A DNA stretch of 64,000 nt from Raja brachyura (Eukaryota), in contig OY740791.1 in NCBI GenBank assembly GCA_963514005.1, positions 39,804,001 to 39,868,000 of the forward strand. Direction: 5' to 3'. Shown piece after piece: positions 15,601 through 58,700 of this stretch. Position numbers and translations under genes: made by a program. The notes under the pieces are model-generated. The model did no database searches and was not told the DNA's origin. It worked only from the letters and a program-made list of their open reading frames with translations. Within the stretch, counting starts at the first letter, position 1; each line of letters opens with the position of its first letter.

Positions 15601-18600
15601 TGACGGTGAATACGCAATGGAAGACATTTAAAGACTGCATGGATGAGGACTTCCGGTGGCGCTTCGGAGTAGGAGGAACTAGCGCCGTCCAGCTCCGCAA
15701 AAATTGTTTCAAAAACGGGAGAAAACGGGGTTATTTATAGCTACTCACCAGAGAGGAACGTTTGTGAACGGCACCGGCAGCTAGATAAGGTCCGTGACGT
15801 CATCAGGTGCGCGACTTTTACAGCGTTAATGTCGATTCAAAGTACCCCCCCCTCCCAAAGTGAAAAAAACAGTGCCGAAAAAAGAGATAGGCCCAGCTGA
15901 AGCCTCGACCTCGAGTTTGACTGGCTCTCTGGAGGATATCCCAAAGAAGAAATCAGAAATGGAGGATCGGAAAACTACCATTATGGGTGAGCTTAAAAAA
16001 ATGAAAAAAGAATATAAAGAAGAATTTAAGTTGCTCAGAGCTGATATTGAAGTATTTAAAGAGCAAGTTAAAGAGGAGTTGAAAAAAGAAGTTGTAACCA
16101 CAGTAAAAATTATGATAGATGAATGGAAGACAAAAGCAGATGCTGATCTAAAACAACAGATGGATGAAGTAAATCAGAAAGTTGGTGGTTTGGAACTCGC
16201 GGTTGATCTCAAGTTGGAACCTATTAAGAGAACACTTGATCAACAACACGATGCAATAAAGGAATTGACCAGTATTGCTGACTCGAGTGCTAAGGCGAAT
16301 GAGAAACTTCTCTCCGAGAACAAGCGTTTAACAGACTTATTGAATAAAATAACTGAGAAATGTATTGACTTGGAGGGAAGGCAACGGCGCAAGAACTTGC
16401 GTATCGTGGGTGTACGTGAAGGCAAGGAGGGAGCTCAAGACACCAGAGAGTTTGCTGCAAATCTTCTGAAGAATGTCTTGAATCTGGATCAAGCACCCCT
16501 ACTTGGCCGAGCGCACAGAGCACTGAGACGACGTCCAAAGACGGGTTCGCCACCAAGACAACTGATTGTGAAAGTGGTCTACGATCATGTTTTGGAAGAT
16601 ATGATGAAGATAATAATTCGCAAACAGAATCTGTTTTATGATGGTGACAAGATCAGCATATTCAGAGATTTTCCTGCGGAAGTGGCCAGGAAGAGCCCTC
16701 TTTACTGAAACAAGGCACATCCTCAGGAATATAAAGGGCATGAGATATGGCCTGATGTACCCTGCCACATTACGAGTAAGCTATGATAATAAAGAGCACC
16801 ACTTCACTAAACATACCGAAGCTCTGGAGTTTGCCCGTAAAATCGAGAAGGAGTTGGATGAGGAAGAAGAAGGAGAAGCAGAGGGAACACAGAGAGAAGA
16901 TGAAGATGAGGATGAAGAATAACGAACTTGAATCATACTCAACACTTACCTGATGCCGATGTTCACCCAGCAATAAGGAGGAAGAATGATGAACTTTTAA
17001 AATTATTGGACTTGGAGAGCTCAATGATTATTAATAACAAATTAATATACAATAGTATTAGTTTAGTACTAACCATTATTAACAAATGTATGTGATACCT
17101 CCTTAAACAATTTAAAATGATAGCAGTAATTAAAACAATATAGCATTAATAAGAATGGAAATGTAACACCCCGCCCCTAAATATATTGCCCTTAAGGCAT
17201 TTACGGAGCTGGAAATATAAACATCTTTTTTTTCCCCCAACGGAAGTCCGTAGATTAATAGCCGCGCTAGTGTGGCTTACACTAACATCACCTAACGTAG
17301 CTATAGACACTTTTTCTTTCCTGCACTTTTCTAATAATATTATTAACTCTTTTTCCTTTTATTTTTATATTATTTTTTTTTATATATATGTGGAATTATA
17401 TTACTTTACTTTTGAATGGTATTATACAGTAGACTGGAGGGGATATGTATGTCAGATAATGTTATTAGTATTAGTTGATCACAAACTAGGGTATGAAATT
17501 GGGATGTATATGCTGAGACATCTACCTCATTATAATCCACCATAATACCCAAATGCAAGATAGTAATAAGAAAAAGGGGGGTGATGGAATCACCTTCTGT
17601 AGTTGGAATGTAAAAGGTATTAATGAACCAATTAAAAGAGGTAAGGTTTTGGCGCTATTAAATAGAATGAAAGCTGATATAATTTATCTTCAAGAGACAC
17701 ATCTAAAAAAGGATGCACAATATAGATTAACGGCAAATTGGATTTCTAGGGTGTATCATTCATCATTTACTCATAAATCTCGAGGAGTTGCCATCCTTAT
17801 TCGTAAAGGTATTCAGTTTAAACATAGTTCAATAATAGAGGATCCTGAAGGTAGATATATAATAGTTACGGGTGAACTATACTGGAAGAAGGTTGTACTT
17901 ATGAATATATATGGCCCAAATTTTGATAATCCGCTATTTTTTAAGAAAATATTTAACACTATTCCTATAGTAACACAGCACAATCTAATAATTGGGGGCG
18001 ACTTAAATTGCACTTTGGATAATTATTTGGATAGATCATCAACCAAAGGGAAGGCTATTTCTAAATCAGGCAAATTCATAAATTCCTTTATTAGGTCAGC
18101 TAATGTCAAAGATATTTGGAGAAATGATAATCCTAATGGTCGAGAATACTCATTTTACTCTCTGGTATTTGGAACATACTCTAGGATAGATTATTTCCTA
18201 ATAGAATCAAAACTTGTCCCATTTACGTATGACTCAAAATATCATAATATTATTATCTCGGATCATGCTCCATTAACATTCAAGATTAATTTAAAGGGTA
18301 TAACTAAATTCGCAATGGAGATTTAATCCTCATATATTAAATGATAAAGCGTGCTCAGATTATCTGGTTAAACAGATTGAATTATTTTTTGAAACCAATG
18401 ATAAACCTGGAATCTCATCATCTCTTTTATGGGACACATTTAAAGCTTTTATACGGGGTGCTATAATTTCTGCGCAGGTACATCTGAACAAGGAAAATCG
18501 AAAGATTCAACAGAAATTGGAAAATGAAATAAGGCAGTTGGACATGGAAAATGCTGTGTCTCCATCTAGGGTTATACATAATAAAATTGCAACATTAAAA

Positions 18601-21600: not shown

Positions 21601-24600
21601 CTTTCTTTATACTTTTTTCTTTTTCTCTTTTTCATACTATAAAAAAAATGGAGGCCTATATACATGGTTTGGTAATATTTATATAATTTTGGAAAGATGT
21701 ATTAATTATATCTGAAAAAATTGTTATATTATTTGTAATGTGTATGGCCTCTAATGAAAATAAATTAAAAAAAATAAATTTTAAAAAAATTAAAAAAAAG
21801 ACTGCATGGATGAACTACAAAAATTGTTCATCCCAGTTTGGCAAAAGAATAAATCAGGGAAGGTAGTGCATCCGTGGATAACAAGGGAAATCAGGGATAG
21901 TATCAAAGCAAAGGATGATGCGTACAAAGTAGCCAGAAAAAGCAGCATACCAGAGGACTGGGAGAAATTCAGAGACCAGCAGAGGAGGACAAAGGGCTTG
22001 ATTAGGAAAGGAAAAATAGATTATGAAAGAAAACTGGCAGGGAACATAAAAACTGACTGCAAACGTTTTTATAGATATGTGAAGAGAAAGAGATTAGTTA
22101 AAACAAATGCAGGTCCCTTGCAGTCAGAAACAGGTGAGTTAATCATGGGGAACAAGGATATGGCGGACCAATTGAATAACGACTTTGGTTCCATCTTCAC
22201 TAAGGAAGACATAAATAATCTGCCGGAAATAGCAGGGAACCGCGGGTCAAAGGAGGACTTGAGTGAAATCCAGGTTAGTCGGGAAGTGGTGTTGGGTAAA
22301 TTGAATGGATTAAAGGCCGATAAATCCCCAGGGCCAGATAGGCTGCATCCCAGAGTACTTAAGGAAGTAGCTCCGGAAATAGTGGATGCATTAGTGATAA
22401 TTTCCCCCTTATCCTTAAGGATTTCCCCCTTATCCTTAAGCTGTGACCCTATGTCCTGGACCTCCCCAACATCAGGAACAATCTTCCTGCATCTAGCCTG
22501 TCCAACCCCTTAAGAATGTTGTAAGTTTCTATAAGATCCCCTCTCAACTCCTTCTTTATTGCTCAATGTTGCCACTTTCCTATGCTCTCCTATGCCTTCT
22601 TTATTGCTCAATGTTGCCACTTTCAGGGAGTTGTGGATTGAACCCAAAGATTCCTCTGTACATCAATGGTGTTACGGGTCTTACGATCAATTATATTTTT
22701 TCCCCTTACATTGGACCTCCCAAAGTTCAACACCTCACACTTGCTTAGAGTAAACTTAATCTGACATTTCTCTCCTCGTTTCTGTAGCTGATCAGTATCC
22801 TGCTGTGACTTTTGACAGTCTTCCCCTTAGTCCGTGACTCCAGCAATCTTGTTGCCTTCTACAAACTTACTAAGCAACATTAGTAACCAATATTTACACC
22901 CAAGTCATTAAAAATATCACAAATAAGGGAGACTGCAGCACAGATCCCTGGCGGAACTCCACTGGTCACAGTCTGAATATTGTCCGTTCAATATAACCGT
23001 CTGTCTCCATCACTAAGACAATTCTGAATTCATACGATCAAGTCACTGCTTCTTAATATTCTGGATCAGCCTAGCATAGGATACTTTATCAAATATGTGA
23101 CAAAAGTCTCTGTAGACAATCTTCGTCACCTCCTCAAAAAACTCAATCAAGTTAGTCAAACATGACCAGCCTTGTACAAAACCATACTGACTGTCCCCAT
23201 TCTCTTCCAAATAGGAGTAAATCCTATCCCAAATAATCCTCTCCAATTGTTTCCCGATCACTGGCGTGAGGATCACCAGCCTATGATTTCTTGGATTCTC
23301 TTGACTTCCCACCCCAGGGCCAGATAGGCTGCATCCCAGAGTACTTAAGGAAGTAGCTCCGGAAATAGTGATAATCTTTCAAAACTCTTTAGATTCTGGA
23401 GTAGTTCCTGAGGATTGGCGTGTAGCAAACGTAACCCCTCTTTTTAAGAAGGGGGGGAGAGAGAAAACGGGGAATTACAGACCAGTTAGTCTAACATCGG
23501 TAGTGGGGAAACTGCTAGATTCAGTTATTAAAGATGGGATAGCAGCACATTTGGAAAGTGGTGAAATCATTGGACAAAGTCAGCATGGATTTACAAAAGG
23601 TAAATCATGTCTGACGAATCTTGTGGAATTTTTCGAGGATGTAACTAGTAGCGTGGATAGGGGAGAACCAGTGGATGTGGTGTATCTGGACTTCCAGAAG
23701 GCTTTCGACAAGGTCCCACATAAGAGATTAGTATATAAACTTAAAGCATACGGCATTGGGGGTTCAGTATTGATGTGGATAGAGAACTGGCTGGCAAACA
23801 GGAAGCAAAGAGTAGGAGTAAACGGGTCCTTTTCACAATGGCAGGCAGTGACTAGTGGGGTACCGCAAGGCTCAGTGCTGGGACTCCAGCTATTTACAAT
23901 ATGCATTAATGATCTGGATGAGGGAATTGAAGGCAATATCTCCAAGTTTGCGGATGACACTAAGTTGGGGGGCAGTGTTAGCTGTGAGGAGGATGCTAGG
24001 AGACTGCAAGGTAACTTGGATAGGCTGGGTGAGTGGGCAAATGTTTGGCAGATGCAGTATAATGTGGATAAATGTGAGGTTATCCACTTTGGTGGCAAAA
24101 ATAGGAAAACAGACTATTATCTAAATGGAGGCCGATTAGGAAAAGGGGATATGCAGCGTGACCTGGGTGTCATGGTACACCAGTCATTGAAAGTAAGCAT
24201 GCAGGTGCAGCAGGCAGTGAAGAAAGCGAATGGTATGTTAGCTTTCATAGCAAAAGGATTTGAGTATAGGAGCAGGGAGGTTCTACTTCAGTTGTATAGG
24301 GTGTTGGTGAGACCACACCTGGAGTATTGCGTACAGTTCTGGTCTCCAAATCTGAGGAAGGACATTATTGCCATAGAGGGGGTGCAGAGAAGGTTCACCA
24401 GACTGATTCCTGGGATGTCAGGACTGCCTTATGAACAAAGACTGCATAGACTCAGTTTATACTCTCTAGAATTTAGGAGATTGAGATGCGATCTTATAGA
24501 AACTTACAAAATTCTTAAGGGTGGACAGGCTAGATGCAGGAAGATTGTTCCCGATGTTGGGGAGGTCCAGGACAAGGGGTCACAGCTTAAGGATAAGGGG

Positions 24601-27600
24601 GAAATCCTTTAGGACCGAGATGAGAAGGACTTTTTTCACACAAAGTGTGGTGGGTCTCTGGATCTCTCTGCCACAGAGGGTAGTTGAGGCCAGTTCATTG
24701 GCTATATTTCAGAGGGAGGTAGATGTGGCCCTTGTGGCTAAGGGGATCAGAGGGTATGGAGAGAAGGCAGGTACGGGATACTGTGTTGGATGATCAGCCA
24801 TGATCATATTGAATGGCGGTGCAGGCTCGAAGGGCCGAATGGCCTACTCCTGCACCTAATTTCTATGTTTCTCTATGTTTCTATGTACGTGGGAGGTCGT
24901 GTCTCACAAATCCGATTGATTTTTTTGAAGACGTGACCAAAAAGGTTGATGGGGACAGAGCTGTAAATGTTGTGTACATGGACTTCAGTAAGGCGTTCGA
25001 CAATGTTCCGCATGGTAGGCTGCTCTGGAAGGTTAGATCACATGGGATCCAAGGAGAGATAGCTGAATGGATAGCAAATTGGCTCCTTGGAAGGAAGCAG
25101 AGGATAATGGTGGAAGGTTGCTGGGCCCGTTATTGTTTGTCATCTACATCAATGATTTGGATGAGAACATACTGGGCAAGATTAGCAAGTTTGCTGATGA
25201 TACAAAAGTTAGTGGTTTTGCAGATAGTGAAGATGGTTGTAAACGAATGCAGCAGGATCTGGATCGATTGGCCAGGTGGGCGGAGGAATGGTTGATGGAA
25301 TTTAATACAGAGAAGTGTGAGTTGTTGCAGTTTGGGATGTCGAACAAGGGCAGGACCTACACAGTAAATGTTAGGCCTCTGGGTGGTGTTGTAGAGCAGA
25401 GGGATCTAGGGGTACAGGTGCATGACTCCTTGAAGGCCGAATCACAGGTAGATAAGGTGGTCACAGAGGCTTTTGGCACTTCGGCCTTCATCAGTCAGAA
25501 TATTGAGTATAGACGTTGGGAGGTCATGTTGCAGTTGTATAATACGTTGGTGAGACTGCAATTAGAATATTGTGTACAGTTCTGGGCACCATGTTATAGG
25601 AAAGGTATTGTTAAGCTTGAAAGGGTACAGAAAAGATTTACGAGGATGTTGCCAGGACTAGGGGGTGTGAGATATAGGGAGAGGTTGAGTAGGCTGGGTC
25701 CCTATTCCATGGAGCGCAGGAAGATGAGGGGAGATCTTAAAGAGGTATACAAAATCATGGGAGGAATAGATTGGGTAGATGCACAGTCTTTTGCCCAGAG
25801 TAGGGGAATTGAGGACCAGAGGACATAGGTTCAAGGTGAAGGGGAAAAGGGGTAAATTTTTCACACAAAAATAACAGAACACACAATGAACACAGTTTAA
25901 CATCCACCACAGTGAGTCTACTCGGTACCTCCTCACTGTGATGGAAGGCAAAAGTCTTAAAGTCCTTGTCTCTTCCTTCCTTGTTCTCCATTTTTCGATG
26001 TTGGCCCCCCCCCCTCCGGGTCCCGCGGCCGAATCCGAGTTCCGCGAACGGGCCGGTTGAAACTCCGCGGCCCGGGGCGGACAAAGCTGCCACCCTCCAG
26101 TCCAGCAGACAAAGCGGTTGTTGCGGGAGCTCCAGAGAATCGGTCACCAACCTGGGACCTGCGAGCTCTCGATGTTGTCGTTTACTGGACCCGCGGCCGA
26201 AGCCTCCGAGGCTCCGAAGTCGGGTCGCCGCCGCAGCACCACCACAGCCCCAAAGTCAACCAGCTTCGTGATGGTGAGAACTGACACTGCCTCCGGAGCC
26301 TCGATGTCGGCCCTAGTTGGAGGCCACCAGCTCCGCGATTAGGCCTCAGCACAGACAGTGACGGAGATACGACAAAGAAAAGGTTGCATCCCCCTGAAGG
26401 AAGAGTTTCCTTCAAAACAAGTTTCCCCCCGCTCCCCACACATACACAACTAAAAATAAACTAAGACATACGTCCAACAAGACAAAAGAAAACAAAAAAA
26501 AAGAAAAAGACAGACGGACTGCAGGCGAGCAGCAGCTGCTTGGGCAGCGCCGCCACTTCCGGAGTATTTAGCTATAGCTTATAGTTATGCCTTCTATTCT
26601 TGGACAGTTCCACCCTGGGAAAAAATGTTCTGACTGTCTACCCTATCTATGTTTTTCATAATTTTATATAATTCTATCAAGTCTCCCCTCAACCTCTGAC
26701 ATTCCAGAGAAAACAATCAAAGTCGAAAATTAGGGCACATGGTATTGGGGGTAGAGTGCTGACATCATAGAAAATTGGTTGACAGACAGGAAACAAAGGG
26801 CAGGGATTAACGATTCCCTTTCAGAATGGCAGGCAGTGCGGTAGCGCAAAGCTCGTTGCTGGAACCGCAGCTATTTACCAAGTACATCAATGATTTAGAT
26901 GAAGGGATTCAGTAACATTAGCAAATTTGCAGATGACACAAAGCTGGGTGGCGGTGTGAACTGTGAGGAGGATGCTATAAGAATGCAGGGTGACTTGGAC
27001 AAGTTGGGTGAGTGGGCAGATGCAGTTTAATGTGGATAAATGTGAGGTTATCCAATTTAGTAGCAAAAACAGGAAGGCAGATTATTATCTAAATGGTGTC
27101 AAGTTGGGAAAAGGGGAGTACAACGGGATCTGGGGGTCCTTGTTCATCAGTCAATGAAAGTAAGCATGCAGGTACAGCAGGCAGTGAAGAAAGTGAATGG
27201 CATGTTGGCCTTCATAACAAGAGGAGTTGAGTAACAGGTGCAAAGAGGTCCTTCTGCAGTTATACAGGGCCCTAGTGAGACCACATCTGGAAACCTTTGT
27301 GCAGATTTGGTCCCCTAATTTGTGGAAGGACATTCTTGCTATTGAGGGAGTGCAGCGTATGTTTACAAGGTTAATTCCCTGGATGTCATATACTGAGAGA
27401 ATGGAGCAGCTGGGCTTGTATACTCTGGAATTTAGATGGATGAAAGGGGATCTTTTTGAAACATATAAGATTTTTAAGGGTTTGGACACGCTAGAGGCTG
27501 GATACATGTTCCCAATGTTGGGGGAGTCCAGAACCAGGGGCCACAGTTTAAGAATAAGGGGTAAGTCATTTAGAATGGAAATGAGAAAACAGATTTTCTC

Positions 27601-42821: not shown

Positions 42822-45800
42822 GGACTTCCAGTGGGGCTAATCGTGGAGTAGGGTGTGCGCCAGCTAGCTCCACGTGAAAAAACACGAAAAAAACAGGAGT
42901 AAAATAAAGAACTGACCTGCAGAAATCACTCCGGCAGCCTGCATGACGTCATCAGACCGCGACTCTGGAGACCTAATGTCGGTAACTCGCTCCCCCACAA
43001 AGGAACCGACTAAAAAACTACAAAAGGTAAACAACCGAAGGAGGAAGTAGGCCCGACTGAAGCCTCGGGCTCAGTTTTAACGTCATCCCAGGAGGGCGTC
43101 TCAAAGGCCCAGAAGACAAAGATAAAGAAAAGTGAAATGGAGGAACTTCATCACAAGGGAAATTGCAAGTATAAAAGAAGAATTGATAAGCTTTAAAAAA
43201 GAATTGAATATTAAAGAAATACTGAAAAGTCTTAAAAAAGAGATTAAAGAAGACTTCTCAGATTTTGAAAATAAAATGACTAATCTTGTCCATATGGAAC
43301 TGGCAACCATGAAGGAGGAAATGTCTGCAAATTTCGACTTAGAAATCAATGAAGTAAACGAAAAAATTAAGTCGAATTAAACCAACTTTAATGATAAGCT
43401 GGGGTTGACCTTCACTACAATGGATCATCAACTGGGGCTGCAAGCTGACGCAATAATTCACTTGGAAGAAACTACAGAGACACTCCTTGCCGAGAACAAG
43501 CGTTTATCAGATTTACTGTATAAAGTAACTGAAAAATGTATTGACTTGGAGGGCCGTCAGAGACGTCAGAATTTAAGAATTGTGGGCGTTCATGAGGGTA
43601 AAGAAGGAAATAAAGATCTCCGTGACTTTGCCGCAGACTTATTAAAAAAGTCTTGAATATAGATCAAAAGCCCTTATTAGGTCGGGCACACAGAGTTCGT
43701 GGACGTCGCTCGGACCCAAATGCCCCCCCAAGGCAGCTGATAGTGAAGGTGCAATATGATCATGTTTTGGATGACATCATGAAAACAATTGCTGGCACAA
43801 GAAATCTTATGCCTGATGGAGACAAAATAAGCATATTTCGAGATTACCCTGCAGGGGTGGTCAGAAGGAGAGTGTTATTCAATGAGACAAGAGGGATTCT
43901 TAAGAAGATAGACAACTTGAGATATGGATTGCTATACCCTGCAAGATTGAGAGTCACTTACCAGGAGAACAAACAGTTTTTCACTGATCACAAGAAAGCA
44001 TTGGCGTATGCTCGGAAGATTGTGGGCACGAGTGAGGACTGAATAACATTCATATAATATCGTCATCTTGCTGAGAATAAATGGAAGTTTAATTTGTTTT
44101 ACTCAAGGACTAATGAAAGCTGATAACGACAACTGAGCAATCCTTCTTGTTATGGACATATTATTCTAATATTTTAGTACTACTTTTTACTAAATTACTA
44201 ATCATTAAGAACACGTTATTATTATTGGAATAATTAGTTAAAAATATGAAATGTAAAAAAGGTATAATTTAGATATCTTATTAATTGGAATTAGTTGTGT
44301 TCTTCCTTTATTTACCTCAGAATAACATTCGAATAATAATTAGCTAAGAGAGTAATAGTCTCTCACTACATGATTACTAACACTCTGGACCAAAACAGTT
44401 CTAATTTAATCCCGTAAATTACTTTAATTGAAAAAAAAAAATTTAAGCGTGGAGCTAGGAATAATTTTTTTTAAGTCTATGGAAGTCCTTAGATGGCCAG
44501 CCACATTAGTGTGGCAAGCACTAACTACACTAACTTTAGATGTAGTTGCTTTTTTCTTCTTACACTTTATTATTTTTTTACTTTTTGTATTTTTTACTTA
44601 ATTACCATTTTAAACTTGAATTAATTTACAAATATTAATTGTGGAGATATGTCCGTGAGGATTTATTTCAATTAGATTTACAACTCATCTGTCCTGTGTT
44701 CGGGTGGAATGTCTGGTTTACTGTGCTGAGCTATCTGCTCTTTTATAGACCACCCTAACCACAAGATGCAAGACGTTAATAGAAAAAACGGGGGTCAAGG
44801 AATTACTTTTTGTAGTTGGAATGTTAAGGGAATTAATGAATCAATCAAGAGAGGTAAGGTATTAGCACACTTAAAATCACTCAAAACAGATATAACATTT
44901 CTTCAAGAAACCCATCTTAAAAACGACGCACAACATAGATTGAAAGCAAAATGGATCGCTGAAACATATCATTCTTCATTCTCCCATAAGGCCAGAGGTG
45001 TTGCAATTTTAATTCGTAAAGGTATACCTTTTAAACACATATCAACTATTGCGGACACTAATGGTAGATATATTATACTAGTAGGTGAATTATATCTAAA
45101 AAAAAGTGATTTTTCTCAATGTCCATGGACCAAATTTTGATAATCCTTTGTTTTTTAAGAATATACTAGCCCAGAGCTCACACAACATAATTTGATAATC
45201 GGTGGAGATTTAAATTGTACACTAGATTCCTATCTCGATAGATCATCAAGACAAAGAAAAGCAAAATCCAAGACCAGCGAATTATTAAACTCATACATCA
45301 ATACTACCAATATCAAGGATGTTTGGAGAATTGAAAACCCATCTGGAAGGGAATACTCACTTTACTCACCGGTACATAAAACCTATTCAAGGATAGACTA
45401 CTTTTTAGTAGATTCTAAACTTATCCCATTTACTTATAACTCGAAATATCATAATATTATAATTTCGGACCATGCTCCTTTAACATTTATGATCAAACTA
45501 AGTGGAATGACTGATAAGCAGACACAATGAAGACTTAATCCTCAAATTTTAAATGATAAAGCATGTTACGAATATCTTATCACACAGTTAAACATGTTTT
45601 TTGAGACAACCGACTGCCCTGGAATATCTGTCTCCCTTCTTTGGGAAACATTTAAAGTATTTATGCTTAGAGCGTTAATCTCCGCACAAGCCTTTCGTAA
45701 TAACGAAAACCGCGCCAAACAACTGGTATTGGAAATGGAAATAAGGCAATTAGATATGGAAAATGCAATCGCGCCTTCTATGATAATACATAATAGTAAG

Positions 45801-48800
45801 ATTAAACGAGAACTTACCTGTTCGAAGTTTGATCTTTATTTTATGAGGAGTTACAATGAGGGATTACGTGAAGAAGCCCCGCCAGTCGCATGCTCGGCAT
45901 ACCTTATAGCAGCGGCATGAAAAACACAGAACCAATAGCCGAAGTAAGATAGTAAGTCTCACACAAGACTAGAACTACCAGATGATCGTTTAGATTATGA
46001 GGGTCGGGAGCGGAGGGCACTTAATCCCTCATCGTAACTCCTCATAAAATAAAGATCAAACTTCGAACAGGTAAGTTCTCGTTTAATCTTACTAGTTTAC
46101 GTGAGTGGCTACGTGAAGATTTTGAAGCTCTGTGATTTTCATGCCGTAGATTAATTCCATACGACACACTGCTTCAGTTGACGCAGTAGTGAGTAAATAA
46201 AAAAGAAAGAAAAGTAATACCCCTCTATAATGGGGGAAATTACAACAAAAGATATGAATCATTACATAAAAGAAAGCAAATAATGAAACAGAACCCAACA
46301 CTGCATGTCCAAACTCTGGCACCGTGATAACAGGTTTATTGTAAAACTTGGAAAAAATGTCTTCTTTACACCATCCTGCGGCCTCTAAAATTTGGTCGAG
46401 TGGCACGTCCAGTGCCATCGCCACGGACGTGGATGCTGCCCTGGTGGAGTGAGAATTAAACACATCAGTGTATACTTCAGCTAAATCCAAAACCTGTTTT
46501 AACAATCTAGAAATAGTTTGTACTGACACTTTTTTGTATGTTTTTTTATGGGCAATAAGCATTATTGTCTCACAACCTCGGAGACTCTTGGTTACTTCAA
46601 TATATTGAGTCAGATGCTTAAACACACACAATGTTTGGTCGACAGGATATGCTCTAAAGATTACCTTTGTTCCAGACTTCCCCGGTCTGCTTTGTTTGAT
46701 TAGATCATAAACATAAAAAGTAATGTTATCTGCAGACAAATGCATACAATCTAAACGTAACATTTGCAATGTTTGTATTCTTTGTGCTGACACTGATGCC
46801 ATAATCATTACTACTTTAAATGTTAATTTCTGAAAAGACAGAGATGTAATTGGAGCCCATTGCCGAAGCAATGTGAGAACTATACTAACATCCCAAAATT
46901 TCTGTGTATCTAGGTTTGGGAGGATTTTTATTAAAAATCCCTCACATAAATCGGGATATTAATGGATTAAACCCGATAGATAGATGTTCTGAAAATTGTC
47001 GTAAATAGGAAGACAAAGCACTACGAGCACTATTAATGGCACTATAACTAAGGTGCTCATCAAGGAACTCCAATACATCCGATATGTTTGCAGTATGATA
47101 AGATATATCTGACTGAATACAAAAAGCTTCCCATTTCTTTATGTGAGACATTTATTGTTTCTTAGTGCTATCTCTCCAAGCAGACGTTATGACATCCATG
47201 GTCCTATCCGACAGTCCAAGCCCTTGTAATGGTCTGCTCAGAACCTGCAGATTAACAAATTCATATGATCATGCAATGGATGAACTTGTTCTGTCACTGG
47301 TTGTACCAACAAATCCCTGGATCTGGGAATCGTCACAAATGGTTCAATTATCATTCTAAGCATCAATGGGAACCATGGCTGTGTAGGCCAGTTTGGAACC
47401 ACCAAAACACCCGTGGCAGAGTCTTGCTCTATTTTACTGAGACATTGCCTAATCAGGCAAAATGGGAGAAAAGCATAGAAAAACATATTTCCCCAATGTA
47501 GCGAGAATGCATCCAACGCTACAGCTCCTGGGTCAGGCTCCCATCACACGTATTTAGGCAATGGGTGCTTTAATCTGGACGCAAACAGATCAATGTCTGG
47601 TACACCATACCGATTGACAATTTTTTTTTGTTGTTGAAAATTTGTGGATTTAACATCCATGCTGTATTGTCTTTAAACTCCCGTGAGCTGTTGTCTGCCA
47701 TAACATTGTCTTTTCCTGGGAGATAGATAGCTGAAAGCCAGATATTCCTAGATACACACCAATTCCACATCAGGTTGACCAGATGATCACATGATACTGA
47801 TCTTACTCCACCCATGTGATTGATATATGCTACAGCTGGGGTATTGTCTACTTGTAATTGAACATGCAAGTCCTCCATTGTAGAACAATAAGCTTTTAAT
47901 CCAAAAAATGCCCCCAATAACTCCAAATAATGAATACCATATGTTTGGAGAATTAAATCCTCTTGGACAGTCCATCTACCACCACAGCTGGTGTCATTGT
48001 CCGTACCCCCCCCCCCCCATCCGAAAGCACTAACATCAGTTTGCAATACCACTGTAGGTTGCTGAATAACAATGTTTTTAGTAGCTTGTGCAACATTCCC
48101 AATCCACCACTGTAGTACAGCCAAAGCATCCGTTGGCAACTGCATGGGTCTGTCAAAATGACCTGCACGTTCTTTTAGTGTTTGTGCTTTTGCCCTTTGA
48201 AGATTTTGATAATGCAAAGGACCAAACTCAACAGCGGGAAATGCTGCTACTATCTTACCAATAACCCTAGCTACTTCTCGGATGGAGGGATAAGGTTTGT
48301 CAGCAAGGCTACTACACGCATTTGTAATATCCACAACTTTATCTGTTGATAAAGTTACTGACATACTGATAATTTCAACTGAATTAATGACAAACCCCAA
48401 ATACTCAATTGTTTGCAATGGCTGTAGCTTAGATTTTGTTGGATGGATCAGAAACCCTACCTTTTCAACAAGCTTATAGTTGCTGAAAATGAATCTTCAG
48501 CTGATTCCTGAGTGGCATTAACAATTAAAATATCATCAAGATAAGCCATGACAATGTGATTTTGAGCCCTTAACAATGCAAGTGCTGGTTTCAATAATTT
48601 TGTGAACAGCCTGGGAGCTGAACTTAACCCATTAGGGAATGCTTTATATTGCCACAGCTGACCCATCCAATTAAACTTCAAGTACCTACGATAATGGTGA
48701 TGAATTGGCACTGAATAATACGCATCTTTGAAGTCTATAGTAGCCATGTAACACCCTATGGACAACAACTCCTTTGCAGTGTTGAAGGTGTCCATTTTGA

Positions 48801-50995
48801 AATGTCTATGCTGGACATATGAATTCAATTTTGTGAGATCCAGACTGACTCTACAACCCCCATCTTTCTTTGCCCTGGGGAAAATATTTGACACAAATTT
48901 TTGCGGATGATTCCCCGTACTTTCAATTACCCCATTTTAAAATAATTTTTTTACTTCTTCTTTTACCTGAGAATTTTCAGGTGCAGAAAACACCAAAACC
49001 CGATTATGTTTATCCTGTACAGGTGGATCAACTCCTTCCATAAATTCTATAATAGCACCTGACACAGTATCTAATATAAACCGATCAGATGTTATACAGT
49101 ACCATTCATCATAAAACAATTGCAATCTACCATCAACCGGAGGTTCCACAACAGTTTCCTCTGTGATAGAATAAAGTTTTTGTACCTCAGCAAATGACCG
49201 TCACGGTCTCCTTTTCCCAATATATGGATTAACATTGGGCTGTGATGGGTAATACCTTCTCACCATACCCCTGCCTCTGCTTGTTCCTGCTCCTGAATCA
49301 AACCCCCTTCTCATCCAGCCAGATTGTCTCCTTTGACCAAATATAAAAGGTTTCATGAGGCTGATCGTCTTTGCCTCCTCACCGATATCTTTAATTTGTT
49401 TAGGCAGGTTTTTTTTTTCCTCCTCCGAATAATAATCTGGAGCTTGAACATTGCTTGATTTACACAATCCAGCAAATCTTGGGTGCAGGATGGGCCGAAT
49501 GGTGATTTTTCTCATACAATTAATCTCAGAATAAGAGTTACAAAACAATACCAACATGTCTTTTTGGATTTTGGACAAAGCATGCCCTTCCAACTGCCTC
49601 CCAAAAGCAGTAATGCCAGCTGTAATGAGCTTGACGACCCTCTGGAATCGTATCTCCTGTCCTCGCATTGTTGAAGTAACTGGTGTCCAAATAGCTGGAT
49701 TCACCGTCGGCACCCTCAGTGATGCACAATTAACATGTGTTTTATAGAGGTCTGCTGTCTCAATCATGACAGTCTCCTGAAGCTGGTGAGAAACCAAATA
49801 ATTAATGTTGGCCACCAGGTTTTCTTCCATGACCTCACCGCTCCCCTCTGGTACAGCAAAGGATTGTGCTACATCTGGTACACCAGCTGTTTGACTTTTG
49901 TGCTGTGGTGGGTATTCAAGACCAAAAACACCACCTTCAGGGTAAGTCTCCTGCCGCCCTGGTACTCCTGAGACTTGCTCAAAGGAGACTTCTTCCAGAC
50001 CTAAACAAGGCTCAGGAGGTTTAAATTCCCATGTTGTAAAGGCACCATATTCATGATATGGAACCCCCTCAGGGGCTGCCTGGGAATACTCTGGGTCTTT
50101 TGACCCTTGGTTAATAATTGTTTGAAGCATTTTCTCCATTTGGTCCATCCTGAGCCACAGGGCCCGTCTGCCTGGCCCTGCCTCTTCTTCATCAGATTCA
50201 TCTGATATTACAGGCCTAGCAGACTTCCTTTTATTTTTCCTCTCCACTGGAGTACTTCCTTTTATTTTTCCTCTCCACAGTACCGTGGTCTGTGGCTGTG
50301 GAGCATCTAAAGGCTGAACTACGGCAGGGTCAACGGCTACCGGTATCGGAACCGGCTCCATACTAATCTGTGGTCCTGATCTTAACTGTGTTTCCACCCG
50401 GGACGCGCGCTTTCCCCGCGCTTTCCCCGCGCCGTTTTTTCACCATGTCCATTTTTTAAACTTCCCAAACTCCTTCTGGCTATTCCAACCAGCGTCACGG
50501 AGTTTCTACCCAGGAAGTAATTTCAACCCACTTACCCGCGGGCCTGTTACTCACCTCTGGTGGAGCTGCGATCTGCAGCCCGTTCCTTACCGACATGCGT
50601 CGACGTAATGCCAAGCATGCACCTGGCGGGGATTCTTCACGTAGTCACTCCCGTGACTCCGAAGTAAAATAAAATAGCTGCACTCAAATATAAGTTAAAC
50701 CAAATATATTCAGACCAAATCATATAACTTTATCAAAAGACTAAACAGCTGCACTTTGAATTCGGTGATAAACCATAAAAATTACTATCACGTCAACTCC
50801 GGAAACAGGAAGGGGAAAACACAATATATAAAATTAAATCAGATACGGGAGAAATATTAACACTACCCAAGGATATTAATGATAGATTCTCTCACTACTA
50901 TCAAACACTTTACTCAACCAAAATGGCAGTGGGTTCTGCAGGAATGGAATTATTTTTACAGAACTGCAATCTTCCTGGTTTAGAGAGGCATGGAT
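42822..50995 (+). mobile_element. L1-clade LINE, copy 2 (divergent subfamily, 3'-truncated, interrupted by DIRS)
   Basis: 5' GGACTTCC; ORF1 RRQNLRIVG; ORF2 EN from 44766; ORF2 resumes collinearly at ~50668. Confidence 0.92.
45795..50670 (-). mobile_element. Complete DIRS1-type tyrosine-recombinase retrotransposon (decayed ORFs: gag 50397-49201, RT/RH 49149-47570, MT ~47516-47238, YR ~47200-46280)
   Basis: RT YLDD; YR HSTR..AGW..FY; inverted termini (45866-45900 vs 50609-50643); ICR 46022-46119 complementary to both ends; AAT at both junctions. Confidence 0.93.
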
Positions 50996-52719: not shown

Positions 52720-55700
52720 GGGCTGTCTTTTCTAGTGTACCTACTGTAAGAAAGCATACTTGACAAAGCTAAAAGAAGGAGGCAGTGGCAAGCTCGTAGA
52801 GCACAGCATGTAGTTGTAAACATAAGTACCATCTCTTTATTTGCATAAGCCTGGCGTGGGTATAGCATTTCTAAGCTTTTCGTGTTTTAAAAGGCTGCAG
52901 AGTGTTTCAGTCATGCCATAAACAGACATGGGTGGAGTGTTTACTGATAAGATATTAGTAGAACTACACTGTCTCCACTTTCTTTTGGTGAGTTGGAGCA
53001 CGAGGAGGTGTGTGATGTAATCGATCATCTTCACAACTCTGCCAACTCCCGCCTGGCACACAAGAAAATAATCTTGATTTACTTTGTGTCTGTTTGTCTG
53101 TGGAAGGTATAACGTACATTAACATTTGTCGTAGTCGGCAGGATTTCGCTGGACCCTATCTCTGAAGACTAAGTAAGAGACTGCTCTCTGACTGGCACCT
53201 CGAAGGCAGTAGAAAGTGCACTATTGGACCCCTTGAGTCTGAGTTCCTGTGAACACTGTGGTCCCTCGTCTAAGGTTGATCTGGTTCCCTGCCAAAATCC
53301 TTATCACTGACAACGTAAGGTAAGAAGATTTTTCGTGACTTTTGGTTGAGTAGGTCAGACTAAGGAGGTAGTCTGTGGTGATTAAGTGGCTAGAGCAGTC
53401 CCACTCGGGGTCTGTCGTAAATCTTGAGCATATCAGAGATCTGGGGTATTGGCTAGATCAGACCAAGTGCGGGTTGTCGTAAATTGCAGATAAGATATCT
53501 GTGGAAGATTGCAGACTGTGGAAGATCTGTGGAAGATATTTTCGATTGGCTAGAGCACTCCGTGTGGGTCTGTCATAAATTAGAGGGCTGAGAATGCGAC
53601 AAACCCTGGGTAAGAATAATGGAGGAGCTCCAGTACAGCATATGTGTTATTTGGATCCGATATGTTATTAGGATCCGAGAAAACTGAGAAAACTGATCAG
53701 GCAAAAAGATTTTCAAAAAAGAGAATATAAACAATTGGTAATGCGAAACATAAGCAAATTATCCCTGGGGACCCCTTGTCTGGCAAGGCGACCCTGTTTA
53801 TAGAAGAGTGGGATGAGGAACAAAGTCAGGAATTGTGTAGGCCACCTCCCCCATATGCCCTAGCCACCAGTTCCTAGCAGCAGGAGCTACCCCTCTAAGA
53901 TCCCAAAGGCAGCGACTTCGGTACCCTTACAGGGAAGGGCACCCCCAGAAGAAAATTATACTGATAGCGACTCGGAAACTGAAAAGGAAAATGAGAAAGA
54001 AAAGGTAAAGGGCTGAGGCAGAAGAGGAAGGAGGAGCAGTAATTGAATCCAGCAGTGAGAGAGTTAAACAACGCAAAGCATCAGAGAGACAGGATATAAA
54101 TCAAATAAGACTGAACAGAGAAAAAGCATGAAAACAGTGTGCTGATGACCTTCTGGTTGCAAGTACAGAGATAAGGAGAATACTGAGGACACCAATGAGC
54201 TACTAAAAGCCTTCCACCACTGGCGTTACATTCCACCCAAACGGAAGGTAGTTCGGGGGCAGCAGCAGCAGTAGCAATGGCGATAGCTGTCCACAAAGAG
54301 AGATAGAAAATGATTCGGACAAAGGCTTTGAGACAAATTACCAATAAACTTTGAATAACTTTTGGCACAGAGCTCGTCTCCCTGATGGGGAGAGATGGAT
54401 AGGTCATGGGGAGAGTTGTGAGTAGCCGGGCAAGTGTGAGGTGTGGCAAGGACCAGAACAGCATCTGAAGCATGGACGTGCATTGCTGACTGACAGGGAG
54501 TCTGACCAAGCACAATTCTGATCACCGTCTAATCACAGTGCCCAGGATCCTGAATGACTGGGAATCAGACCAATCACCTCTTTTTGCACAAGTAAAATTT
54601 TGCGATATTGCTCAGTACTACAGAATGAGCATTGACGAAGGACTTCCGGTTGGCGCCATGGAGTAGTAGAATTTGCGCCATTCCAGCTCCGCTAAAAATT
54701 GAAGAAAAAACGGGGGTATAGGGGTCAGTTAAACGTGCTTACCACAGGAGAACGACTGGGAACGGCTCCGGTAGCGTTAAAAAGGTGCGTGACGTCATCA
54801 GGCGCGCGACTTTAACAAGAAAATAAAATGCAACGCTCCCCCCCCCGCCGGTGGAAAAAAACCTCCAAGAAAGGAAATAGGCCCTGCTGGAGCCCTGAGC
54901 TCGAGTTTGGCTGCTTCCCAAGAGGAGATCTCACAGAAGAAAGCTGAAATGGAGGAACTTAAAAACACAATCCAAGGTGAGATGAAGAAAATGCTTAGAG
55001 AAATGAAGAAGGAGTATAAAGATGAAATAAAAACTTTAAGAGCAGATATTCTGGTGTTTCATGAGAAAATTAAAGATGAATTAAAAAAAGAAGTTATAGA
55101 GACGGTAAAGATTATGATGAACGAATGGAAAGAAAAGGCTGACGTTGATTTACAAAACCAAATGGTGGAGGTAAACGACAAAGTTGCTGGGATGGAAAGA
55201 ATGCTGGATGAGAAGATAGATCCTATTTTAATCTCGCTCGACCAACAAAATGATGCAATTAAAGAGCTAACTGAGCTTGCTGCATCAAATACTAAGGAGA
55301 GAGAGAAGCTCCGCTCCGAGAACAAACGTCTATCAGAATTATTACGCAAAATAAATGAGAAATGTATCGATTTGGAGGGACGTCAATGGCGTAAGAATTT
55401 GCGTATAGTTGGATTGAGCGAGGGTCGTGAGGGAAATCAAGACCCTCGAAAATTTGTTGCAAAACTCCTAAAGGACATTTTGAATTTGGATCAAGAACCC
55501 CTGTTGGGCCGTGCACACAGGGCATTAAGACGGGTGTCTGGGAGAGATGTACCCCCAAGACAAATGATTGTAAAGGTGGCTTACGATCATGTTTTTGAAG
55601 ACATGATGAAGATAATAATACGTAAGAAAAATCTTAAATACGAAGGGGATAATATTAGTATCTTCAGAAATTACCCTGCGGAAGTGGCCAAGAGAAGATC

Positions 55701-58700
55701 TTTATTCACAGAAACAAGAGGTATTCTGAGGAATATAAAGGATACAAAGGATCTGAGATATGGCCTGATGTACCCAGCAACATTAAGAGTAACCTACAAC
55801 AATAAGGAGTACTGTTTCGTTAAACATACAGAAGCACTGGAATTCGCTCGAAACATACAGAAGGAAACAGAAGAGGAAGAAGAACAAGAGGAAGAAGAAG
55901 ACGACTGAACTTTTATTACCCACCTGCGGTTATGAATTATCCATGGAGAGAGAGGAGGAATAATGGACATGGACTTTAATTTTGGTTTAAAGAGAGATGG
56001 ATAGATTACTACCCTATGTCAATTATTCCCCTAACATAGTATCATTTATCCCCCTAACATAGTATCACTTATCAGAATATTAATCACAATAGATATTAGT
56101 AATATGAATTATCACTAAGTATATAAATTTAGTACCCCACCCCAATATATGCAGCACTCAAGATAGGAGCTGGAACTATTAACATCTTTTTTTTTTTTAA
56201 ACGGAAGTCCGTAGATTAGTAGCCACGTTAGTGTGGCTTACACTAACACACACTACACTATATATAGGTGTAGTTACTTTTTTTTCCGGGAACTTTATTA
56301 ACACCCTTCACTTTACATTTACTCACACCTTTTATTATTTTTTATATATTATATATTTGATTCTATATTATATATTATATGAATATATGTATGATTGGTA
56401 TTAAATAATCAGTTTAAGGAGACGTGTATATGGAATAGTAAGACATATATTAATTTTAATCGATCCAATGTTTGGGTATAATGTTGAGTTGGATGGGCCG
56501 AGACGGCTACTCCAATATAAACCACCCTAATAGCAAAATGCAAGACATTAATGTGAAGACTGGGGGTGATGGAATCACCTTCTGTAGTTGGAATGTTAAG
56601 GGAATTAATGAACCAATTAAAAGAGGTAAGGTGTTAGCCCAATTAAACAGATTGAAATCAGATGTTACTTTTCTTCAAGATACCCATCTCAAAAAAGATG
56701 CTCGACACAGATTAACAGCTAAATGGATTTCGAAAGTGTATCACTCTTCATTTATACATAAGTCTAGAGGGGTAGCAATAATTATTCGTAAAGGTATACC
56801 TTTTAAACAAAGTTTTATAATAGAGGATACGGAGGGTAGATATGTATTAATTACAGGGGAATTATACTCTAAAAAAGTAATCCTTATGAATATATATGCC
56901 CCTAACTTTGATAACCCATTATTTTTTAAGAAAATATTTAATAATATCCCTATATCTACTCAATATAACTTAATAATTGGGGGTGATTTCAATTGTACTT
57001 TAGATAATTATTTAGATAGATCTTCAATGAAAAGGAAAGCTATCTCTAAGTCAAGTAAACTTATAAATTATTTTATTAGTACAGCAAATGTTAAGGATAT
57101 CTGGAGAATAGATAACCCACTGGGACGAGAATATTATTTTTTCTCGCCTGTATTCGGAACTTATTCGAGGATAGATTATTTTTTAATAGATTCAAAATTA
57201 CTTCCATTTACGTATGATGCAAAATATCATAATATTATCATTTCTGATCATGCTCCACTAACATTTAAGATAAAATTAAAAGATATAATTAATAAAACTC
57301 CTAACTGGAGGCTTAACCCCCATATATTAAAGGACAAGGCTTGTTATGATTACTTGGTAAAACAGATTAAATTATTTTTTGAAACTAATGACAAACCTGA
57401 AATTTCACCATCACTTCTTTGGGATACATTTAAAGTATTTATGCGCGGTGCAATAATATCAGCACAAGCATATTTTAACAAAGAAAATCGAAAGACGGAA
57501 CAAAAGTTGGAAAAGGAGATAAAACAATTAGATCTTGAGAATAAAAAATATCCTTCTAAAGTGTTAAGTAATAAAATTGCAATATTAAAATATAAACTAA
57601 ATAAAATATACTCTAATCAAGTAATTAAACTTTTTCAACAAACTAAACAAGTGCATTTTGAATTTGGAGATAAACCACAAAAACTGTTGGCGCGAAACTC
57701 AGAAAACGAGATGATGAAAAAATGATACATAGAATTAGATCTGAGCATGGAAATGTATCGACCTTACCAAAATATATCAATGATATATTTTTACAATATT
57801 ATCAAAGTCTTTATTCATCTAAATTAACAGGACAAACAGATGGAATGGAAACATTCCTACAAAAATGTAATATTAAAAGTTTAGATCAGGAAGGTAGAGA
57901 CTTGTTAAACACTGATATATCAATAAAAGATATTGAAGAATCAATCGGATCATTAAATAATGGAAAAGCTGCGGGCCCTCATGGCCTGAGTGCAGAATTT
58001 TATAAGAAATTTCAAGATCTGATTTCCCCAAGATTACATATAGTGTATAAATATACATATGAACAAGGAAAATTACCGGAATCTTTAAATGAATCTACAA
58101 TTACACTTATTCCTAAGGTTGACAAGGATTTGGAAGACCCTGGATCATACAGAGCAATTGCTCTTTTAAACACAGATCAAAAAATATTAGCTAAAGTTTT
58201 ATCTCGGAGATTAAGTTTGGTGATCACTAAAATAATACATCATGATCAAACAGGTTTTATTCCAAAACGTTATTCATCCCACAATTTGAGACGATTATTC
58301 AATATTATATACTCAAAAAGAGTATGTGATACGGAATTAGCTGTTATATCCTTAGATGCAGAAAAAGCATTCGATCAGGTTGAATGGCCATATTTATTTA
58401 AAATAATGGAGAAATTTCAATTGGGAGATAGATTTTGTAAATGGGTAAGAATTCTATATTCGAATCCTACTGCAAGAATATTAATTAACCAAATATTATC
58501 AGCTAAATTTAAGCTTTATAGGGGTTGTAGACAAGGATGTCCGCTATCGCCTTTGTTATTCGCTCTGGTGATAGAGCCTTTAGCTGAAAGGATTAGATCT
58601 GAACCAGAAATATATAGATATAATACTGATACTACAACTAATAAAATATCTCTATACGCAGATGATGTCTTAAATTATATTACAAAACTGGAGATTAGTA

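What the first reader, a model, noticed from the sequence alone, without database searches (positions are those of the whole stretch)
15647..17249. L1 RNA 5' terminus pairs ~1.5 kb away with the inter-ORF spacer through two nested, co-varying helices that loop out ORF1
Seen in all three diverged L1 copies, in the order a-b-[ORF1]-b'-a'. Copy 1: a GGACTTCCG 15647-55 / a' CGGAAGTCC 17241-49; b TCCAGCTCCG 15688-97 / b' CGGAGCTGGA 17204-13. Copy 3: a 54640-48 / a' 56202-10; b TTCCAGCTCC 54681-90 / b' GGAGCTGGAA 56166-75. Copy 2 changes both strands together: a GGACTTCCA 42822-30 / a' TGGAAGTCC 44480-88; b CTAGCTCCACG 42864-74 / b' CGTGGAGCTAG 44448-58. The rest of the AT-rich spacer is poorly conserved. 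A local hairpin between a and b (GGCGCT/AGCGCC; TGGCGC/GCGCCA) would complete a three-way junction. Established: how bicistronic LINEs translate ORF2 is poorly understood. Inference: the bridge brings the capped 5' end to ~300 nt upstream of the ORF2 AUG (a shunt or cap-delivery device), or it licenses full-length RNA for RNP assembly. I know of no description of this in L1.
Basis: partly seen in the sequence, partly recalled or inferred. Interest (0 to 1): 0.88.

Follow-up and report, generated by a model that had tools for sequence, protein, structure and literature searches.

The report
L1 5' end complements inter-ORF island
Three diverged copies of a fish-type L1 retrotransposon carry, in the spacer between their two genes, the reverse complement of the element's first 9 bases and of a second box about 40 bases in, which may let the RNA fold back on itself or may simply be a second, inverted set of promoter boxes.

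Summary
In all three L1 copies the two longest exact complementary matches between nt 1-70 and the next ~1.9 kb are a/a' (9 nt) and b/b' (10-11 nt). They lie at homologous places, nested around ORF1. a' and b' sit in a conserved island of roughly 90-110 nt inside an otherwise poorly conserved AT-rich spacer, and public contigs cover the island better than its flanks.

- Head plus island cofold into both helices in 3 of 3 copies, beyond 300 of 300 shuffles each.
- Whole-RNA folds do not contain the helices.
- Two of the three compensatory changes in copy 2 are double CpG decays; one (C-G to U-A in b) is not.
- The a motif is already known as the conserved 5' extremity of zebrafish and lizard L1, read as a transcription-factor site (PMC5381506). 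A DNA-level reading (inverted promoter boxes, possibly an antisense promoter) therefore stays a serious rival.
- The shunt reading fails: the helix starts at nt 1, and 4-8 AUGs lie between a' and the ORF2 AUG.

Only three copies could be obtained. An earlier unchecked note (s1-881378) flags conserved stem-loops in this spacer elsewhere in the genome.

The parts
15647..15655 (+). c1 box a: first 9 nt of the L1 element (GGACTTCCG)
   Evidence: the target-site duplication ends at 15646
15656..15687 (+). c1 head middle: GGCGCT/AGCGCC hairpin arms and the purine-rich box b'' (CGGAGTAGG), which is also complementary to the 3' part of b
15688..15697 (+). c1 box b (TCCAGCTCCG)
15959..16922 (+). c1 ORF1 (frameshifted), the part that the pairing would loop out
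17204..17213 (+). c1 box b' (CGGAGCTGGA), the start of the conserved spacer island
17214..17240 (+). c1 linker with the conserved T8 tract between b' and a'
   Evidence: T8 invariant in 3 of 3 copies
17241..17249 (+). c1 box a' (CGGAAGTCC)
17250..17320 (+). c1 rest of the conserved island: TAGAT, hairpin AGCCGCG/TGTGGCT, CACTAAC, TAG.T.TAG, CTTTTT
17553..17555 (+). c1 ORF2 start codon, 303 nt after a'
42822..42830 (+). c2 box a (GGACTTCCA)
42864..42874 (+). c2 box b (CTAGCTCCACG)
44448..44458 (+). c2 box b' (CGTGGAGCTAG)
44480..44488 (+). c2 box a' (TGGAAGTCC)
44489..44560 (+). c2 rest of the conserved island
54640..54648 (+). c3 box a; the first 12 nt (GGACTTCCGGTT) equal the published zebrafish L1 5' consensus
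54681..54690 (+). c3 box b (TTCCAGCTCC)
54949..55908 (+). c3 ORF1, intact (319 codons plus stop)
56166..56175 (+). c3 box b' (GGAGCTGGAA)
   Evidence: the alignment of a diverged public contig resumes exactly at 56166
56202..56210 (+). c3 box a' (CGGAAGTCC)
56211..56285 (+). c3 rest of the conserved island

Best explanation
The sense-strand L1 RNA can close on itself. Its first 9 nt (a) and nt ~42-52 (b) pair with a' and b' in a conserved island of the ORF1-ORF2 spacer, which loops out the rest of the 5' UTR and all of ORF1.

Shown: the complementarity, its position and conservation in three subfamilies, one non-CpG compensatory change, and a favourable local pairing energy.

Inferred:
- The pairing forms in vivo and is selected.
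- It competes with local partners. Box b'' in the head matches the 3' part of b, and in c1 and c2 the island can close on itself.
- It therefore works as a two-state switch. The closed form buries the capped terminus, which should lower cap-dependent loading for ORF1. It also ties the 5' end to the structured spacer element, as a mark of a full-length RNA used for RNP assembly or for ORF2 expression.

In kind this resembles the U5-gag long-range interactions of retroviral genomic RNAs. It does not resemble a ribosome shunt.
For: - a/a' and b/b' are the top two exact complementary matches in 3 of 3 copies.
- Gap-free pairing tables give 9 bp for a in all three copies and 10, 11 and 10 bp for b, with the helix ends shifted but the length kept.
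- b core position 2 is C-G in c1 and c3 and U-A in c2, and is not a CpG site.
- Cofold ddG is -16.5 to -23.4 kcal/mol, and 0 of 300 shuffles reach it in each copy.
- The island is the best duplex partner of the head among all 60-nt windows of the element in c1 (rank 1 of 1203) and c2 (1 of 568), and rank 10 of 1200 in c3.
- The island is a conserved block: 21% c2 difference against 40-52% in the flanks.
- It is covered 5-8 times better than the neighbouring spacer bins in 3 of 3 DNA-type runs.
- The island hairpin shows two one-sided changes to or from G.U. These keep pairing only on the + strand, so the island looks like a sense-RNA element.
- The linker length between b' and a' varies (27, 21 and 26 nt). 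A helix tolerates that, whereas a fixed promoter geometry would not.
Against: - There are only three sequences.
- Two of the three compensatory changes are double CpG decays, in a copy that lost 10 of 14 shared CpGs.
- Whole-RNA minimum-free-energy folds contain none of the pairs. Pair probabilities are 0.00-0.01 in c1 and c3 and about 0.2-0.27 in c2.
- In c3, nine windows give better duplex energies than the island.
- Among public contigs, a frequent head variant at a helix-b position (54683 C>A) carries 1315 of 1879 depth in X2. No change is listed at its partner 56173. That list is truncated (606 rows not shown), so this is only a hint.
- The a box, and an AGCTCCG-like box about 40 nt in, are conserved in primary sequence across very distant L1 lineages (zebrafish, lizard, frog). 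That is what protein-binding sites do and what plain helices need not do.
- No RNA data exist: none of the 23 listed runs is on record as RNA.
Confidence: 0.4

Rival explanations
1. DNA-level reading. a (an ETS/GABP-type CCGGAAGT site on the TSS) and b (the AGCTCC box at about +42) are protein-binding boxes of the internal L1 promoter. The spacer island carries a second, inverted set of the same boxes. It acts as an antisense promoter, or as an internal enhancer or promoter, and the RNA complementarity is a by-product.
For: - PMC5381506 (passages read) reports GGACTTCCGGTT as the extremely conserved 5' extremity of all zebrafish L1 families and GACTTCCGGTG in lizard clade 1.
- The same passages report a shared GAGCTCCG about 40 bp from the start of frog families. 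The authors read these motifs as transcription-factor sites.
- c3's first 12 nt equal the zebrafish consensus.
- The 5' UTR holds other invariant boxes typical of promoters, for example TGACGTCATCAG at about +150 in 3 of 3 copies.
- Order and orientation in the island are exactly an inverted head.
- The common variant 54683 C>A has no listed partner change.
- Antisense promoters exist in human and mouse L1 (recalled, not from a call).
Against: - Host-factor boxes give no reason for matched changes on both sides (b position 2 C>T with G>A).
- The box spacing differs between head (32-33 nt between a and b) and island (21-27 nt), and the other conserved head boxes are missing from the island.
- In c2 both ETS-like sites have lost the CpG of the CCGGAAGT/ACGGAAGT core.
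- The island's hairpin changes are wobble-compatible only on the + strand.
Confidence: 0.3
2. Relic without joint function. An ancient inverted duplication (for example a twin-priming type 5' inversion) put a copy of spacer sequence at the 5' end. The two sides are now each conserved for separate reasons, and the matched changes in c2 are coincidence.
For: - The complementarity extends weakly beyond the helices, as in a decayed inverted repeat. In c1 and c3 there are 2-3 further pairs after a conserved G x A mismatch at position 10.
- By my own enumeration, half of all double CpG transitions at a CG/CG step look compensatory.
- c2 lost 10 of 14 shared CpGs.
Against: - It needs the non-CpG double change in b to be chance. 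I estimate about 0.1 from the 21% island divergence, half of it transitions.
- It does not explain why helix length is kept at 10-11 bp while the ends shift.
Confidence: 0.15
3. The pairing acts in the minus-strand cDNA. The 3' end of the first-strand cDNA (the complement of a and b) folds back on the cDNA copy of the island and primes or organises second-strand synthesis.
For: The complementarity is strand-symmetric, so the same helices exist in the cDNA. a is the exact terminus, so its complement would be the cDNA 3' end.
Against: - Extending such a snap-back would copy only the ORF2 side and leave ORF1 unpaired, which matches no known L1 product.
- The wobble positions in and next to the helices, and in the island hairpin, fit the + strand and not the minus strand.
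Confidence: 0.05

Closest known systems
Conserved 5' extremity of non-mammalian vertebrate L1 (Boissinot and Sookdeo 2016, PMC5381506; passages read)
   Same: The 12-nt start GGACTTCCGGTT of c3 is identical to the zebrafish consensus. The short 5' UTR and the long AT-rich spacer with T-rich tracts also match the fish and frog type. A box like the frog GAGCTCCG lies about 40 nt in.
   Different: The paper reads the motif as a transcription-factor site. It reports that RNAfold of the spacer alone showed no shared pattern. The passages I read do not mention a complement of the 5' motifs in the spacer. Its supplement S4 (spacer sequences) was not available to me.
Retroviral U5-gag long-range interactions (MPMV LRI-I and LRI-II, PMC4878616, abstract read; MMTV, listing only)
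   Same: Two conserved complementary segments tie the 5' end region of a retroelement's genomic RNA to a downstream region. They are thought to hold the architecture of a signal used to select the RNA.
   Different: Those are in retroviruses and proven by SHAPE and by disrupting or restoring mutants. They do not enclose a whole gene. Here the element is a LINE, the loop is about 1.5 kb with all of ORF1, and there is no experiment.
Ribosome shunt of the CaMV type (recalled from general knowledge)
   Same: A stable base-paired structure that could let ribosomes bypass a long stretch before a downstream ORF.
   Different: A shunt needs a take-off site and a short ORF upstream of the stem, and a landing site from which the target AUG is reached. 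Here the stem starts at nt 1, and 4-8 AUGs lie between a' and the ORF2 AUG.
L1 antisense promoters (human 5' UTR, mouse ORF1; recalled)
   Same: An internal promoter pointing backwards within an L1. An inverted copy of the start-site box is what one would expect of one.
   Different: No start-site data here. The island lies in the spacer, not in the 5' UTR or ORF1, and the box spacing differs from that of the sense promoter.
Predicted IRES next to ORF2 in long L1 spacers (PMC5381506)
   Same: A structured element in the long spacer proposed to serve ORF2 translation.
   Different: Those predictions lie within about 10 bp of the ORF2 start. The island lies 277-327 nt upstream of it.

Membership tests
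L1 (LINE-1 clade) retrotransposon | ORF2 with an APE-type endonuclease and a reverse transcriptase related to L1 ORF2p | tested here: met
   Pfam Exo_endo_phos E 4.5e-13 and RVT_1 E 1.1e-36. The RT piece matches solved human L1 ORF2p at E about 1e-109, against about 1e-20 for R2 proteins.
L1 (LINE-1 clade) retrotransposon | ORF1 of the L1 type (coiled coil, RRM, CTD) upstream of ORF2 | tested here: inconclusive
   No Pfam family at E <= 0.001. The only PDB sequence match is the mouse L1 ORF1 domain 2ldy at E 0.15.
L1 (LINE-1 clade) retrotransposon | A-rich tail and target-site duplication | tested here: met
   c1: 14-17 nt duplication and an A-rich tail. c3: 11 nt duplication and an A tail. 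c2's 3' end was not examined.
Long-range RNA interaction of a retroelement genomic RNA (U5-gag type) | Complementary segments conserved across diverged relatives | tested here: met
   3 of 3 copies, at 70-77% overall identity
Long-range RNA interaction of a retroelement genomic RNA (U5-gag type) | Compensatory covariation beyond chance | tested here: inconclusive
   One non-CpG double change, two CpG-type double changes, n = 3. One frequent head variant has no listed partner change.
Long-range RNA interaction of a retroelement genomic RNA (U5-gag type) | Pairing detected on the RNA and needed for function | not testable with these tools
   No RNA run on record. No probing data.
CaMV-type ribosome shunt | Take-off site with a short ORF upstream of the stem | tested here: not met
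   Helix a starts at element nt 1
CaMV-type ribosome shunt | Landing site from which the target AUG is the next usable start | tested here: not met
   8, 4 and 7 ATG between a' and the ORF2 ATG, against 5.3, 4.5 and 6.1 expected
ETS/GABP-type promoter box, inverted copy as antisense promoter | GGAA core in a CCGGAAGT-like context at both places | tested here: met
   Head reverse complement CCGGAAGTCC and island ACGGAAGTCC in c1 and c3. c2 has CTGGAAGTCC and ATGGAAGTCC. The consensus itself is recalled.
ETS/GABP-type promoter box, inverted copy as antisense promoter | Transcription start at the island and factor occupancy | not testable with these tools
   All runs were contigs without strand or ends
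HDV-like or other known 5' ribozyme / any Rfam family | Match to a curated covariance model | tested here: not met
   0 matches at gathering score in the whole window

The most novel reading that the evidence does not exclude
The 'extremely conserved' 5' extremity of long-spacer vertebrate L1s is conserved not only as a promoter box. It is also one strand of an RNA bridge to a spacer element. The bridge closes the full-length transcript around ORF1 and switches it between cap-dependent ORF1 translation and a closed state used for ORF2 expression or RNP assembly. This would be a LINE counterpart of the retroviral 5'-leader switches and a function for the long, unexplained spacer.
Probability: 0.25. 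Interest if true: 0.85.

Novelty: new variant of a known kind. Interest (0 to 1): 0.58.

Why it matters
How bicistronic L1s with spacers of several hundred bases express ORF2 is open, and so is why their 5' extremity is conserved across families that share nothing else in the 5' UTR (PMC5381506).

A conserved complement of that extremity in the spacer ties the two puzzles together. It gives a concrete pair of helices to mutate. If it is instead an inverted promoter module, it would be the first indication of an antisense promoter in the spacer of a non-mammalian L1. Either outcome can be tested with the coordinates given here.

Tried and rejected
1. More copies. I looked for further copies to run a real covariation test and found none.
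- ORF1p against viral contigs: 0 relatives.
- ORF1p alignment A3 against metagenome contigs: 593 pattern matches, 0 confirmed.
- A degenerate island DNA pattern against metagenome, genome and viral contigs: 0 each.
- tblastn and sensitive blastn inside the window: only the three copies.

2. Public reads.
- None of the 23 listed runs is on record as RNA, and all are contigs.
- Laying four runs on c3 54400-56800 gave coverage and a truncated variant list (606 rows not shown). It gave no linked head-island information, no strand and no ends.

3. Known RNA families. Rfam at gathering score: 0 hits in the window.

4. Thermodynamic folding.
- Folding the whole 5' end to the ORF2 start does not recover the helices.
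- I rejected this as a refutation because 1.9-kb folds are unreliable, but it is no support either.

5. Splice-site idea.
- I considered that the U tract plus TAG after a' is a 3' splice site that removes ORF1.
- I found no conserved GT donor in the three 5' UTRs by eye, and no contig joint with such ends. I dropped it without a formal test.

6. Local structure.
- A local conserved structure for the head alone was rejected: RNAalifold gives -5.4 kcal/mol with a covariation term of +1.78.
- A c1-only 8-nt match between the head (ACTAGCGC) and the island hairpin is absent from c2 and c3.
- A self-closing stem of the island (ATTTA[C/A]G ... C[G/T]TAGAT) is present in c1 and c2 but not in c3.

7. 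The count of structure pairs was not used. MAFFT put c2's b' into an insertion in the only alignment that holds head and island together (A4). I made gap-free pairing tables by script instead.

8. Literature. My searches found no paper describing pairing between an L1 5' end and its spacer. Supplement S4 of PMC5381506 holds spacer sequences of zebrafish, frog and lizard families and could bear directly on this. It was closed and I did not see it.
Full report
What is there

The window holds three copies of one L1 lineage.
- c1 starts at 15647, c2 at 42822 and c3 at 54640. tblastn and sensitive blastn find no others.
- ORF2 carries an APE endonuclease and a reverse transcriptase (Pfam). Its RT part matches solved human L1 ORF2p at E about 1e-109.
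- ORF1 has no Pfam family and only a weak match to a mouse L1 ORF1 domain (E 0.15).
- c3 is the least decayed, with an intact ORF1 of 319 codons. c1 has frameshifts. c2 has stops and is interrupted after 45795.
- The copies are 70-77% identical, so they represent different subfamilies.

All three begin with GGACTTCC.
- In c1 a target-site duplication ends exactly at 15646.
- In c3 three extra bases separate the duplication from the element.

Check of the observation

Every coordinate and string in the finding is right. I searched each copy for exact reverse-complement matches of 8 nt or more, between nt 1-70 and the following ~1.9 kb up to the ORF2 start.
- In 3 of 3 copies the two longest matches are a/a' (9 nt) and b/b' (10, 11 and 10 nt). 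They lie at homologous places and nested in the order a-b-ORF1-b'-a'.
- Gap-free pairing tables show a as 9 bp in all copies, followed by a conserved G x A mismatch.
- b is TCCAGCTCCG in c1, CTAGCTCCACG in c2 and TTCCAGCTCC in c3, so the ends shift but the length is kept.

a' and b' open a conserved island in the spacer.
- Its order is b', a linker with an invariant T8, a', TAGAT, a hairpin, CACTAAC and further blocks.
- Where c1 = c3, c2 differs at 21% of island columns, against 52% upstream and 40% downstream.

Public contigs of four coded runs, laid on c3 at 80% likeness, show a very high-copy family (1448-2413 contigs laid in each of the three large runs).
- In the three large runs the island bins (56101-56262) carry 5-8 times the summed depth of the neighbouring spacer bins.
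- One diverged contig resumes its alignment exactly at 56166, the first base of b'.

Is it more than chance?

- Cofolding nt 1-60 with the island forms both helices in 3 of 3 copies. The gains are -21.4, -16.5 and -23.4 kcal/mol over the separate folds, and 0 of 300 dinucleotide shuffles of the island reach these values in any copy.
- Scanning the head against every 60-nt window of the element, the island ranks 1 of 1203 in c1, 1 of 568 in c2 and 10 of 1200 in c3. In c3 a stretch of the 5' UTR and the 70 nt before the ORF2 AUG score better.
- So the inverted repeat is real and not a chance match.

Results against an RNA structure, or neutral to it

- Minimum-free-energy folds of the whole 1.9 kb contain none of the a or b pairs in any copy. 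Pair probabilities are 0.00-0.01 in c1 and c3 and about 0.2-0.27 in c2.
- The head alone has no convincing conserved local fold (RNAalifold -5.4 kcal/mol, covariation term +1.78).
- Rfam gives no hit in the window.

How strong is the covariation?

All informative changes come from one lineage, c2.
- The a9 change (G-C to A-U), and the change just 3' of CTCC in b (G-C to A-U), are each CpG to CpA in the head with CpG to TpG in the island. Both lie at palindromic CG/CG steps.
- c2 has lost 10 of the 14 CpGs that c1 and c3 share in the 5' UTR and spacer.
- By my enumeration, two of the four possible double transitions at such a step restore Watson-Crick pairing and a third gives two wobbles.
- The change at b core position 2 (C-G in c1 and c3, U-A in c2) is not at a CpG. 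From the 21% island divergence, half of it transitions, I put its chance probability near 0.1.
- A further column three bases 3' of CTCC reads A-U, G-C and U-A in c1, c2 and c3. In c1 and c3 it is flanked by mismatches, so it is not clearly part of a helix.
- The 3' part of b is also complementary to a box inside the head, b'' (CGGAG in c1, CGTGGAG in c2, TGGAG in c3). The same changes fit a local partner as well.
- Among public contigs a frequent head variant, 54683 C>A, carries 1315 of 1879 depth in X2, 224 of 586 in X7 and 280 of 463 in X1. It has no listed change at its partner 56173. That list shows only the best supported rows (606 not shown), so this is a hint against strict pairing at the helix end, not proof.

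What is already known

Boissinot and Sookdeo (PMC5381506; passages read) report several relevant points.
- The 5' extremity of zebrafish L1 families is extremely conserved, with consensus GGACTTCCGGTT. This is identical to c3's first 12 nt.
- Lizard clade 1 starts with GACTTCCGGTG.
- Frog families share GAGCTCCG about 40 bp from the start, much like the core of b at nt 42-51 here.
- The authors read these as transcription-factor sites (XrpFI for zebrafish; I recall this factor as GABP-related, not from a call).
- They say that folding the spacer alone showed no shared pattern, and they predict an IRES next to ORF2.
- In the passages I read they do not mention a complement of the 5' motifs in the spacer.
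- None of my searches found such a description.

Consequences for the mechanism

The shunt or cap-delivery idea does not fit.
- Helix a starts at nt 1, so nothing lies upstream of the stem for a scanning subunit to take off from.
- The 303, 277 and 327 nt between a' and the ORF2 AUG hold 8, 4 and 7 AUGs, as many as composition predicts.

My best reading, at 0.4, is a cis long-range pairing of the sense RNA that competes with local partners and closes the transcript around ORF1.
- It would bury the capped end and tie it to a structured spacer element.
- The closest proven analogues are the two U5-gag long-range interactions of MPMV, which hold the architecture of the packaging signal (PMC4878616, abstract).
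- Modest support that the island works as sense RNA comes from its hairpin. Two one-sided changes to or from G.U keep pairing only on the + strand.

The main rival, at 0.3, is a second, inverted set of promoter boxes.
- It would act as an antisense or internal promoter, and the RNA complementarity would be a by-product.
- It explains the deep conservation of primary sequence.
- It does not explain the matched non-CpG change, the different box spacing (32-33 nt in the head against 21-27 nt in the island), or the absence of the other head boxes from the island.

A functionless relic of an inverted duplication (0.15) and a fold-back in the cDNA (0.05) are less likely.

Verdict

- The RNA-bridge reading is plausible but rests on three sequences and one clean compensatory change.
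- The specific shunt mechanism is disfavoured.
- The 5' motif itself is known. Its paired complement in the spacer appears to be undescribed.
- An earlier first-reader note on another piece of this genome (s1-881378) flags conserved stem-loops in the L1 spacer. Another note on this window (s1-899895) flags the hairpin after a'. I checked only the latter, in part.

Noticed in passing
window 15787-15818, 42936-42962, 54782-54813: An invariant block TGACGTCATCAG..CGCGACT (a CRE/ATF-like palindrome) about 150 nt into the 5' UTR of all three L1 copies. It is the best conserved part of the 5' UTR after the first 12 nt.
   Followed up: no
window 17470-17552, 44690-44765, 56455-56537: A conserved block of about 80 nt directly upstream of the ORF2 ATG. 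In c3 the ORF2 frame is open upstream, with in-frame ATGs at 56481 and 56493. In c3 and c2 this block also has high duplex potential with the 5' head (-42.3 and -38.4, against -23.8 in c1).
   Followed up: partly
window 17262-17290, 44501-44530, 56223-56252: The island hairpin AGCCRCR/YGUGGCU overlaps an alternative hairpin, TAGTGT/ACACTA, so it could be a two-state element. The variable pairs change on one side only, to or from G.U.
   Followed up: partly
window 15630-15646 and 21797-21813: c1 is inserted into another coding-looking repeat, whose reading continues after the duplication (an ORF at 21806-22513 on the + strand).
   Followed up: no
window 45795-50668: c2's ORF2 is interrupted by about 4.9 kb that carries minus-strand ORFs of 92-398 aa, probably a nested insertion of another element.
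   Followed up: no
window 54637-54639: Three extra bases (GAA) lie between the target-site duplication and the first base of c3. They may be untemplated, or come from a start 3 nt upstream in the source copy.
   Followed up: no
window 22326-22384 and 23312-23370; 22412-22552 and 24475-24614 (minus): Short exact or near-exact repeats downstream of c1 (59 nt at 100%; 142 nt at 93%, inverted). They are unrelated to L1.
   Followed up: no
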